DNA of 51,629 nucleotides, counting the filler, from Bipalium vagum (taxonomy: Eukaryota), in NCBI GenBank assembly GCA_037834085.1. It is 3 parts of 3 records of this genome, joined end to end, with 100 filler letters (N's around TTAATTAATTAA, not from the genome) between each part and the next. Parts side by side here need not be neighbours in the genome. Positions count along the whole stretch, not along the records: positions 1 to 16,369 come from JBBMKC010114516.1; 2 more parts are not named here. The stretch is one strand, 5' to 3'. Positions 5,488 through 5,562 of this stretch are shown here, piece after piece; position 1 is the first letter of the stretch, and each line of letters begins with the position of its first letter. The translations under genes were made by a program, and so were the position numbers. The notes under the pieces are model-generated. The model worked only from the letters and a program-made list of their open reading frames with translations. It made no database searches and was not told where the DNA came from.

Positions 5488-5562
5488 TGTGAGATATATT
5501 GAAAATTAGTCGGGGGGATGTCGGGTTCGAATCCCGGTATCTCCGATTAATTTTCACTAACA
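5488..5562 (+). repeat. TRIM 5' LTR containing a hairpin (5500-5556) and Pol III B box (5524-5534)
   Basis: Sequence: tgtgagatatattgaaaattagtcggggggatgtcgggttcgaatcccggtatctccgattaattttcactaaca. Confidence 0.95.

What the first reader, a model, noticed from the sequence alone, without database searches (positions are those of the whole stretch)
5500..5556. TRIM LTR is essentially one RNA hairpin capped by a perfect tRNA T-loop / Pol III B box
Seen: LTR nt 13-69 pair into 24 bp with a single 2-nt G bulge. All four non-Watson-Crick pairs are G-U on the + strand, so the fold works only for the sense RNA. The 7-nt loop is UUCGAAU closed by GGG/CCC, i.e. GGTTCGAATCC (5524-5534), the B-box/T-arm consensus. 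A TATAT motif precedes the stem and a T4 run lies in its 3' arm. No properly spaced A box, D arm or anticodon arm is present. Known: B boxes bind TFIIIC, and TRIMs with Pol III-gene-derived LTRs exist (5S-derived Cassandra; tRNA-like Helenus, from memory). Inference: this may be a distinct design, a tRNA top-half mimic or B-box-only promoter, possibly yielding a roughly 55-nt Pol III hairpin RNA or spreading TFIIIC sites through the genome.
Basis: partly seen in the sequence, partly recalled or inferred. Interest (0 to 1): 0.88.

Follow-up and report, generated by a model that had tools for sequence, protein, structure and literature searches.

The report
Deleted tRNA-like LTR of a mini-retrotransposon
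The hairpin is real, but it is what remains in one 271-bp miniature LTR retrotransposon after a deletion, found only in this copy, removed the middle of a tRNA-Ala-like sequence that about 2,000 sister LTRs in this genome still carry, so it is a broken copy of a known kind of element (Helenus) and not a new design.

Summary
[quoted passage not shown] LTR nt 13-69 fold into 24 bp with a 2-nt G bulge, four G.U pairs and a UUCGAAU loop inside GGTTCGAATCC.

The interpretation does not hold. The same genome has about 2,000 LTRs of this family. The normal LTR is 114 nt and holds a complete tRNA-Ala-derived pseudo-tRNA with A and B boxes (Rfam tRNA 46-48 bits). It shares distinctive sequence with the genome's own tRNA-Ala(UGC) gene.

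The window copy lacks about 40 nt: the D arm, the anticodon arm and the A box. The acceptor stem, the T arm and the family's 12-bp leader-trailer stem therefore collapse into one hairpin. The deletion junction occurs only twice in the 440-Mb assembly, and both sites are the two LTRs of this element. Three of the four G.U pairs are inherited, one being G3:U70, and the deletion created the fourth.

The family fits Helenus (TRIMp3, Kojima 2024). It is probably new for flatworms. It has 5-bp TSDs, a tRNA-Arg(ACG) primer and a candidate Ty3/Gypsy partner. No RNA data were available.

The parts
5483..5487 (+). 5' target-site duplication GAGAT
   Evidence: Identical pentamer at 5759-5763. 13 of 15 other complete copies also have 5-bp TSDs.
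5488..5562 (+). 5' LTR, 75 nt, TG..CA. It is a deleted form of the 114-nt family LTR.
   Evidence: Direct repeat. 75/75 identical to the 3' LTR. Alignment to family LTRs shows a gap of about 40 nt.
5500..5556 (+). The reported hairpin. It is made of a 12-bp leader-trailer outer stem, a GG bulge, the 7-bp acceptor stem, a U.G pair, a 4-bp T stem and the 7-nt T loop.
   Evidence: RNAfold gives -28.9 kcal/mol and z = -4.4, with the pair list.
5521..5522 (+). Deletion junction: tRNA position 8 (T) is joined directly to the T stem. About 40 nt are missing (D arm, A box, anticodon arm, variable loop).
   Evidence: Alignments. The junction 24-mer, with up to 2 mismatches, is found only at 5514-5537 and 5710-5733 in the whole assembly.
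5524..5534 (+). B box / T arm, GGTTCGAATCC
   Evidence: Exact match, none expected by chance. Conserved in the family.
5551..5554 (+). T4 run, corresponding to the TAATTTT trailer/terminator of the genome's tRNA-Ala gene
   Evidence: Compare L055 ...CTCCATAATTTTGG with the LTR ...CTCCGATTAATTTTCA.
5563..5579 (+). Primer-binding site TGGCGACCACACCAGGA, complementary to the 3' end (with CCA) of tRNA-Arg(ACG)
   Evidence: Loci show tRNA-Arg sequence plus CCA joined to the reverse complement of an LTR end. L037 is called tRNA-Arg(ACG) by ARAGORN.
5563..5683 (+). Internal region, 121 nt. It is purine-rich and has no T4 run. It carries a 10-nt deletion relative to the 131-nt family form that is found only here.
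   Evidence: Alignment and base composition. The deletion junction is unique in the assembly.
5672..5683 (+). Polypurine tract AAAGGAGGAGGA, abutting the 3' LTR
   Evidence: Sequence. The family form is ..AAAGGAGGGGGA|TGTGAG and the candidate partner has ..GAAGGGGGA|TGTGAG.
5684..5758 (+). 3' LTR, identical to the 5' LTR. It has the same hairpin (5696-5752) and B box (5720-5730).
5759..5763 (+). 3' target-site duplication GAGAT

Best explanation
The hairpin is the remnant of a tRNA-Ala-derived pseudo-tRNA that sits in the LTR of a Helenus-type TRIM family. This family has about 2,000 LTRs and about 490 LTR-PBS junctions in this genome.

In the normal 114-nt LTR, a 72-nt tRNA-like sequence is clamped by a 12-bp stem formed between its 5' leader and its 3' trailer. 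The tRNA-like sequence has an A box (TAGCTCAGCGG), a D arm, a degenerate anticodon arm, a T arm with the B box, and an acceptor stem with G3:U70.

In the window copy about 40 nt are deleted, from tRNA position 9 to about position 49. The acceptor stem and T arm, which stack on each other in any tRNA, become contiguous. Together with the clamp they form one 24-bp hairpin.

Shown: the deletion is found only in this element and is the same in both LTRs. Inferred: it arose before or during the single retrotransposition that made this copy. The likely cause is reverse transcriptase skipping the structured tRNA-like body, or an unassembled deleted source copy. A second deletion of 10 nt, also found only here, lies in the internal region.

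Inferred: without the A box the copy should not work as a tRNA-type Pol III promoter, so it is a dead-on-arrival derivative. Its B box could still bind TFIIIC.

For the family, a tRNA-Arg(ACG) primer is shown from the sequence. Mobilisation in trans by a Ty3/Gypsy family that shares the LTR ends, PBS and PPT end is inferred.
For: - Family copies have about 40 extra nt exactly at the junction, and these restore a full tRNA-like sequence.
- ARAGORN calls these sequences tRNA-like. Rfam tRNA scores them 46-48 bits against a gathering score of 29.
- The genome's tRNA-Ala(TGC) gene (L055:106-177, 70.4 bits) shares GGGGATGTAGCTCAG, GCATGTGAA(A)GGTCCCGGGTTCGA and the trailer TAATTTT with the LTR.
- The junction pattern, with up to 2 mismatches, matches only the two LTRs of this element. 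The internal 10-nt deletion is also unique.
- LTR halves are abundant: 2,052 T-arm halves, 1,603 A-box halves and 488 LTR-PBS junctions.
- Other LTRs carry many different internal deletions in the tRNA-like part, about 13 of 30, so such deletions are common.
- The window LTRs are 75/75 identical, whereas other copies differ at 1-8 sites between their LTRs.
- The full LTR folds with the same outer stem.
- Contigs of an independent-looking DNA run cover the 3' junction of the insertion without a mismatch. Where they meet the deletion point, their loose ends read the full-length sequence (...CATGCGCATGTGAAGGTCC).
- Partner: LTR TGTGAG..GCAGCTAACA, the same PBS, PPT ..GGGGGA, a gag zinc knuckle, RVT_1, RT_RNaseH, rve, and a GPY motif before the PPT.
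Against: - The assembly is fragmented (272,664 contigs, 440 Mb), so unique in the assembly is not proof of unique in the genome.
- The deletion junction has no clean microhomology and comes with one extra G, so the mechanism and timing of the deletion are not determined.
- No RNA data exist for this organism in the tools. Pol III use of the family promoter, and its loss in this copy, are therefore inferred only.
- No complete autonomous copy with both LTRs was recovered. The partner assignment rests on shared termini, PBS and PPT end only, and the partner's TSD length is unknown.
Confidence: 0.9

Rival explanations
1. One reading: the LTR is a distinct, selected design. It would be a tRNA top-half mimic or B-box-only Pol III unit that produces a hairpin RNA of about 55 nt or seeds TFIIIC sites across the genome.
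For: The hairpin is very stable and strand-biased. The B box is perfect. A sub-threshold mascRNA-like match covers the acceptor stem and T arm. The element did integrate with intact hallmarks.
Against: There are only two instances of the junction in 440 Mb, and both lie in this element. The family master form has a full tRNA-like sequence with an A box. The G.U pairs are inherited or made by the deletion. There is no covariation. The A box needed for a tRNA-type promoter is missing.
Confidence: 0.03
2. Same origin, different timing. A full-length copy inserted here, one LTR later suffered the deletion (replication slippage or repair at the structured tRNA-like part), and LTR-LTR gene conversion copied it to the other LTR.
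For: Single-LTR deletions in the tRNA-like part are frequent in other copies, for example L003, L005, L014 and L022. Gene conversion would also explain the 100% LTR identity.
Against: None of the 15 other complete copies examined shows the same deletion in both LTRs. In L005 and L048, where both LTRs carry deletions, the two deletions differ, so conversion seems rare. A second deletion found only here lies in the internal region, which fits one error-prone reverse transcription better.
Confidence: 0.15
3. Assembly artefact: the short-read assembler collapsed or mis-joined repeat copies and created the deleted LTRs.
For: The assembly is highly fragmented and the family has thousands of near-identical LTRs. 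The deletion junction itself was not shown to be bridged by an independent contig.
Against: The same junction appears twice inside a coherent element that has a matching 5-bp TSD and lies in a 16-kb contig. A contig of run X1 spans the 3' LTR end into the unique flank with 0 differences. A mis-join would not produce two identical 75-nt LTRs together with a matching TSD.
Confidence: 0.03

Closest known systems
Helenus (TRIMp3; Kojima 2024, PMC10886601)
   Same: A short non-coding element with two LTRs, a PBS, a PPT and a TSD. The LTR contains a tRNA-derived sequence with conserved box A (TRGCY..YGG) and box B (GGTTC). The tRNA-like part is not a functional tRNA. A Gypsy-type partner is inferred from PBS similarity, as for the animal Helenus families.
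   Different: - Six characteristic motifs of this family are absent from the paper's consensus file.
- The host appears to be a flatworm, a phylum not in the paper's list.
- TSDs are 5 bp, whereas all listed animal Helenus families with a determined TSD have 4 bp.
- The full element is about 359 bp with a 114-nt LTR, near the small end of the range reported for Helenus.
- The window copy (271 bp, 75-nt LTR) has lost box A and is below the reported Helenus range of 311-1263 bp.
Cassandra and Ajax (TRIMs with 5S rRNA-derived LTR sequence)
   Same: The same concept of a Pol III small-RNA gene embedded in a TRIM LTR. In Cassandra, transcription starts and ends inside the small-RNA part of the LTRs. 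This is the model that the T4 run and tRNA-like start in the present family suggest by analogy.
   Different: The embedded sequence here derives from a tRNA, not from 5S rRNA. No 5S match was found in the Rfam scan.
SMART (small LTR retrotransposons, 292 bp, plants)
   Same: Extreme miniaturisation of an LTR retrotransposon that keeps LTRs, PBS and PPT. SMARTs are cited as the shortest reported group.
   Different: SMART is a family that is thought to depend on a Copia element and has no small-RNA sequence. The 271-bp element here is a single deleted copy, not a propagating family.
tRNA acceptor/T-arm minihelix and mascRNA-type tRNA-like RNAs (from established knowledge)
   Same: The hairpin core is an acceptor stem stacked on a T arm, including G3:U70. 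Rfam aligns it to mascRNA with the central 25 model positions skipped.
   Different: The score of 18.7 bits is well below the gathering score of 42.5. There is no CCA or free 3' end, because the acceptor stem is extended by 12 bp of leader-trailer pairing. It arose by deletion in one TE copy, and no evidence shows it is made as an RNA.
tRNA-derived SINEs (SINE2)
   Same: A tRNA-derived A/B-box module that has been multiplied to thousands of copies.
   Different: This family has LTRs, a tRNA-complementary PBS, a PPT and 5-bp TSDs instead of a LINE-dependent tail, so it moves by the LTR-retrotransposon route.

Membership tests
Helenus / TRIMp3 | Short (<1 kb) non-coding element bounded by two direct LTRs | tested here: met
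   271 bp. The 75-nt LTRs are 75/75 identical and run TG..CA. Family copies are about 359 bp.
Helenus / TRIMp3 | PBS complementary to a tRNA directly after the 5' LTR | tested here: met
   TGGCGACCACACCAGGA at 5563-5579 is the complement of a tRNA-Arg(ACG) 3' end plus CCA. The genome also holds tRNA-Arg-like 3' ends that differ at one base (GGCGTGGTCG). Some family copies carry the matching PBS variant.
Helenus / TRIMp3 | Polypurine tract directly before the 3' LTR | tested here: met
   AAAGGAGGAGGA at 5672-5683. Conserved in the family.
Helenus / TRIMp3 | Target-site duplication (4 bp in described animal families, 5 bp in fungal and plant ones) | tested here: met
   A 5-bp TSD here and in 13 of 15 other copies. 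The length differs from the 4 bp reported for animals.
Helenus / TRIMp3 | tRNA-derived sequence with box A and box B in the LTR: family level | tested here: met
   Rfam tRNA 46-48 bits against a gathering score of 29. ARAGORN calls them tRNA-like. Box A TAGCTCAGCGG and box B GGTTCGAATCC are conserved.
Helenus / TRIMp3 | tRNA-derived sequence with box A and box B in the LTR: this window copy | tested here: not met
   Only the acceptor stem and the T arm with box B remain. Box A and the D arm are deleted, and there is no tRNA call.
Helenus / TRIMp3 | Sequence identity to one of the published Helenus consensus families | tested here: not met
   Five of six characteristic motifs have no occurrence in DataS1. 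The sixth hits an unrelated fungal family. Caveat: line wraps in the file could hide a motif.
Helenus / TRIMp3 | Transcription by RNA polymerase III from the LTR | not testable with these tools
   No RNA run was available. The paper itself has not validated this for Helenus.
Functional tRNA gene | Complete cloverleaf with an anticodon arm that matches its isotype | tested here: not met
   Window copy: no tRNA. Family copies: ARAGORN gives 'tRNA-???' with an abnormal anticodon loop, the anticodon stem does not pair (sequence), and the score is 22 bits below the real tRNA-Ala gene.
Cassandra / Ajax | 5S rRNA-derived sequence in the LTR | tested here: not met
   No 5S rRNA match at E <= 10 in 5300-5900.
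mascRNA-type tRNA-like RNA (RF01684) | Match at or above the Rfam gathering score | tested here: not met
   18.7 bits against 42.5, with the central 25 model positions skipped.

The most novel reading that the evidence does not exclude
The deletions arose in the RNA or cDNA before integration. On that reading this 271-bp element is the smallest LTR retrotransposon copy known to have completed reverse transcription and integration, below the 292-bp SMARTs. It would show that the body of the tRNA-like module, including the A box, is dispensable in cis for those steps.

At family level, the 12-bp leader-trailer clamp would be a selected device. It would protect the embedded pseudo-tRNA from RNase P and RNase Z cleavage, so that a Pol III transcript running from the 5' LTR to the T4 run of the 3' LTR survives as the template. 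The structured tRNA-like R region would be a hotspot for reverse-transcriptase skipping.
Probability: 0.3. Interest if true: 0.45.

Novelty: new member of a known kind. Interest (0 to 1): 0.27.

Why it matters
The hairpin itself is a broken copy and needs no new biology.

The family behind it is of modest interest. It appears to extend Helenus/TRIMp3 elements to flatworms. It shows an animal Helenus with 5-bp TSDs, whereas all described animal families with a determined TSD have 4 bp. It also comes with a traceable source tRNA gene (tRNA-Ala), a primer tRNA documented by read-through fossils (tRNA-Arg ACG), and a candidate Ty3/Gypsy partner that shares LTR termini, PBS and PPT end.

About 2,000 pseudo-tRNA copies will also inflate tRNA gene predictions in this genome. 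They may scatter A/B-box TFIIIC sites across it.

Tried and rejected
96.7% of cells are paired against a shuffle mean of 96.8%, and there are 0 compensatory pairs. The copies are too alike (94% column identity), so this neither supports nor refutes selection on structure.
- RNA evidence: the look-up of sequencing runs returned one run of unknown type, kept as contigs, and no RNA run. Read laying therefore shows presence only.
- Organism identity: the 299-aa ORF at 7944-8843 has no homologue and no Pfam family. The protein atlas search on a COX1 piece was not informative. Only the mitochondrial code and gene order gave a lead.
- Complete autonomous partner: three 8-kb stretches next to 3' LTRs held no second LTR. 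The copy in L051 is degraded. The partner's TSD length and full structure are therefore not established.
- A first strict pattern for the genome's tRNA-Ala found nothing. A looser one did.
- Deletion-hotspot claim: about 13 of 30 LTRs carry deletions of 6 nt or more in the tRNA-like part, against none in 15 internal regions. I do not rely on this, because the loci were picked by similarity over the internal region, which biases against internal deletions.

Full report
OBSERVATION. The sequence features are exactly as described. Window 5488-5758 is a 271-bp terminal-repeat retrotransposon in miniature (TRIM). It has two 75-nt LTRs (5488-5562 and 5684-5758, TG..CA) that are 75/75 identical. A 5-bp target-site duplication GAGAT flanks it (5483-5487 and 5759-5763). 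The primer-binding site TGGCGACCACACCAGGA lies at 5563-5579 and the polypurine tract AAAGGAGGAGGA at 5672-5683.

RNAfold pairs LTR nt 13-69 (5500-5556) into 24 bp with one 2-nt G bulge, four G.U pairs and the loop UUCGAAU. Energy is -28.9 kcal/mol, z = -4.4, and 0 of 200 shuffles fold as well. The opposite strand folds less well, at -20.5 kcal/mol and z = -3.0. GGTTCGAATCC occurs at 5524-5534 and 5720-5730, with none expected by chance. ARAGORN finds no tRNA in the window. Rfam gives only a 15-nt T-arm match and a sub-threshold mascRNA-like alignment of acceptor stem plus T arm, at 18.7 bits against a gathering score of 42.5.

WHAT IT REALLY IS. A search of the window's own genome (440.8 Mb, 272,664 contigs) with the 271-bp element gave 1,375 candidates. 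Nearly all scored copies match the query on both sides of the LTR midpoint but carry about 40 extra bases there.

Reading these copies shows that the normal LTR is 114 nt. It reads TGTGAGATAAATTGAAAATTAGTC, then a 72-nt tRNA-like sequence, then ATTAATTTTCACTAACA. ARAGORN calls the insert tRNA-like with an abnormal anticodon loop. The Rfam tRNA model scores it 46-48 bits against a gathering score of 29.

The genome's own tRNA-Ala(UGC) gene (L055:106-177, 70.4 bits) shares three distinctive stretches with the LTR:
- the first 15 nt, GGGGATGTAGCTCAG;
- the stretch GCATGTGAA(A)GGTCCCGGGTTCGA;
- the 3' trailer TAATTTT.

The LTR module therefore descends from this lineage's tRNA-Ala (UGC or CGC isoacceptor) together with its Pol III terminator. 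It keeps box A (TAGCTCAGCGG), the D stem, the T arm with box B, and the acceptor stem with G3:U70. Its anticodon stem no longer pairs. It is a pseudo-tRNA.

The window copy lacks tRNA positions 9 to about 49: the D arm with box A, the anticodon arm and the variable loop. What remains is the acceptor stem and the T arm, which are coaxial in any tRNA. There is also a 12-bp stem between the 5' leader (TGAAAATTAGTC) and the 3' trailer (GATTAATTTTCA), which the full-length LTR forms as well. Joined end to end, these give the 24-bp hairpin.

The four G.U pairs are accounted for:
- G22.U60 belongs to the family-wide outer stem.
- G29.U55 is G3:U70 of tRNA-Ala.
- G33.U51 is a family-wide C66-to-T change.
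- U34.G50 was created by the deletion, with tRNA position 8 taking the place of position 49.

They are inherited or accidental, and are not evidence of selection for a sense-strand fold. The TATAT motif is a minority variant; most copies read ATAAATT.

IS THE TOP-HALF FORM A DESIGN? No. The junction GGGGATGTCGGGTTCGAATCCCGG, with up to 2 mismatches allowed, occurs exactly twice in the assembly, and both sites are the two LTRs of this element. By contrast the assembly holds 2,052 matches to the T-arm/trailer half, 1,603 to the leader/A-box half and 488 to the LTR-PBS junction, each within 3 mismatches.

The window element also carries a 10-nt deletion in its internal region (121 nt against 131 nt) that is again unique in the assembly. 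Other copies show many different internal deletions of the tRNA-like part, usually in only one LTR. Examples are L003 3', L005 both LTRs (with different deletions), L014 5', L021 5' and L022 3', about 13 of 30 LTRs in all. The window's deletion is therefore one of many.

It is unusual only in being identical in both LTRs. Both LTRs of a new insertion are copied from one template. The simplest reading (inference) is that the deletion was present in the RNA or arose during minus-strand cDNA synthesis of the event that made this copy. The zero LTR-LTR divergence and the second deletion found only in this copy fit that reading. A post-insertion deletion followed by gene conversion cannot be excluded.

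Contigs of one public DNA run cover the 3' LTR/flank junction without a mismatch. Loose ends at the deletion point read the full-length sequence of sister copies.

STRUCTURE CONSERVATION. On 26 full-length LTRs, the outer, acceptor, D and T stems are 96.7% paired. This equals the shuffle expectation of 96.8%. No pair changes on both sides. 22 cells keep pairing through a one-sided change, 7 of them from one subfamily A-to-G variant, and 24 cells lose pairing. The copies are too similar (94% column identity) for this to say anything about selection.

THE FAMILY.
- Size and TSD: typical copies are about 359 bp (114 + 131 + 114). 13 of 15 have 5-bp TSDs.
- Internal region: the sense strand is 67-71% purine, has 14-20% T, and lacks TTTT in 15 of 16 copies. 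This is compatible with Pol III read-through, and equally with simple PPT-like composition.
- Primer: the PBS matches the 3' end plus CCA of tRNA-Arg(ACG). Several loci preserve longer pieces of that tRNA, with CCA, fused to the reverse complement of an LTR end (L033, L035, L037). These are fossils of plus-strand synthesis reading on into the primer.
- Candidate partner: a second family with an AT-rich LTR of about 240-255 nt shares three things with the TRIM. These are the LTR termini (TGTGAG... and ...GCAGCTAACA, against ...CACTAACA in the TRIM), the same PBS, and the same PPT end (..GGGGGA|TGTGAG). It encodes a gag zinc knuckle, RVT_1, RT_RNaseH and an rve integrase, with a GPY motif before the PPT. 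That is a Ty3/Gypsy architecture, and it is the candidate autonomous partner (inference from shared cis signals). I could not recover a complete copy with both LTRs.

HOW IT LIKELY WORKS (inferred, by analogy with Cassandra). In intact copies, TFIIIC would bind boxes A and B. [quoted passage not shown] Some transcripts would have to read through the LTR's own T4 run and stop at the T4 of the 3' LTR. That gives an RNA whose repeated R region is essentially the pseudo-tRNA. The Gypsy partner's reverse transcriptase and integrase would then copy and insert it, primed by tRNA-Arg.

The genome's real tRNA-Ala gene uses the same TAATTTT trailer. Most Pol III transcripts probably end after about 85 nt, and read-through would be the minority product. 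The leader-trailer clamp might protect the RNA from RNase P and RNase Z; this is speculation. The window copy has no A box and should be inert as a tRNA-type promoter. Its B box might still bind TFIIIC.

COMPARISON WITH WHAT IS KNOWN. Kojima (2024, PMC10886601) defined Helenus as TRIMs whose LTRs contain a tRNA-derived sequence with conserved boxes A and B. Together with Cassandra and Ajax these form the group TRIMp3. [quoted passage not shown] Animal families have 4-bp TSDs and Gypsy-like PBS relatives. Sizes range from 311 to 1,263 bp.

The family here meets every structural criterion for Helenus. Five of six characteristic motifs are absent from the paper's consensus file, and the sixth hits an unrelated fungal family. 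Its TSD is 5 bp.

The host's mitochondrial COX1 reads AAA as Asn and TGA as Trp. The contig order is trnF-cox1-trnE-ORF-nad5-like. This agrees with the ancestral triclad arrangement, in which trnF lies between nad4 and cox1 (PMC12870015). The host is therefore probably a planarian-like flatworm, a phylum not on the Helenus list. I found no paper reporting Helenus in flatworms. The species itself was not identified.

VERDICT. The TRIM and T-arm reading is right. The claim of a distinct top-half design is not supported. The hairpin is a deletion derivative, found in this one copy only, of a Helenus-type LTR. The family is a new member of a known kind, with a few differences worth recording: a new host phylum, a 5-bp TSD, and an identified source tRNA, primer tRNA and candidate partner. 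Interest is low to moderate.

Noticed in passing
L033:1500-1780 (G000:C255542), L035, L037:109-190 (G000:C104860): Pieces of tRNA-Arg(ACG), up to nearly full length and ending in CCA, are fused to the reverse complement of an LTR end (..CCA|TGTTAGT..). They look like fossils of plus-strand DNA synthesis reading on into the tRNA primer, and they identify the primer directly.
   Followed up: partly
L007:440-560, L010:200-320, L012:1660-1790 (minus strand), L028:1-80, L047 (minus strand): At least five copies share an unrelated repeat (..ATGCCATACTAGGCTCACAGAAATGTGCAATTGATTT..AATTTTGTTCG) fused to the TRIM exactly inside the T loop, in place of the 5' LTR. Their 3' LTR is normal. This looks like a chimeric repeat that has itself multiplied.
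   Followed up: no
L014:868-912; L044:1390-1420: The PPT/LTR junction GGGGGA|TGT is the same 9-mer as the start of the tRNA-like sequence (GGGGGATGT). In L044 the 3' LTR begins directly with ..GGGGGATGTAGCTCAG, as if the two repeats had recombined. This may bear on how the tRNA was captured.
   Followed up: no
L055:106-177 compared with L014:902-973: The T loop of the LTR (TTCGAAT, box B GGTTCGAATCC) is closer to the canonical B-box consensus than that of the genome's own tRNA-Ala gene (TTCGATC). This is possibly promoter optimisation in the master copy, or descent from another gene copy.
   Followed up: no
L046 (G000:C55477:1-285): An AT-rich LTR of the candidate partner type is followed by a PBS and an internal start (TGGTGACCACACCAGGACACCAA..) like that of the TRIM. 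This is possibly a tRNA-less relative or ancestor of the TRIM.
   Followed up: no
window 4637-4725 and 4876-4964: Inverted repeat with 89-nt arms, 85% complementary and 150 nt apart. It is MITE-like or foldback-like.
   Followed up: no
window 9-536, 3602-3883 (minus strand), 15808-16368: Other transposon remnants: a gag-like ORF with two CCHC zinc knuckles, an HTH ORF, and a Tc1/mariner-type transposase N-terminus (HTH_Tnp_Tc3_2) cut off by the edge of the piece. The flanks of the TRIM (about 5785-5967) are also repetitive, judging by contig depth.
   Followed up: partly
window 7944-8843 (minus strand): An intact 299-aa ORF with no homologue in the 5.8-billion-protein search and no Pfam family.
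   Followed up: partly
L070 (G000:C253947:1-3077): Mitochondrial contig with the order trnF-cox1-trnE-ORF-nad5-like. It reads AAA as Asn and TGA as Trp, and has 27% G+C. Many further cox1-like pieces with stop codons elsewhere in the assembly look like nuclear copies of mitochondrial DNA.
   Followed up: partly
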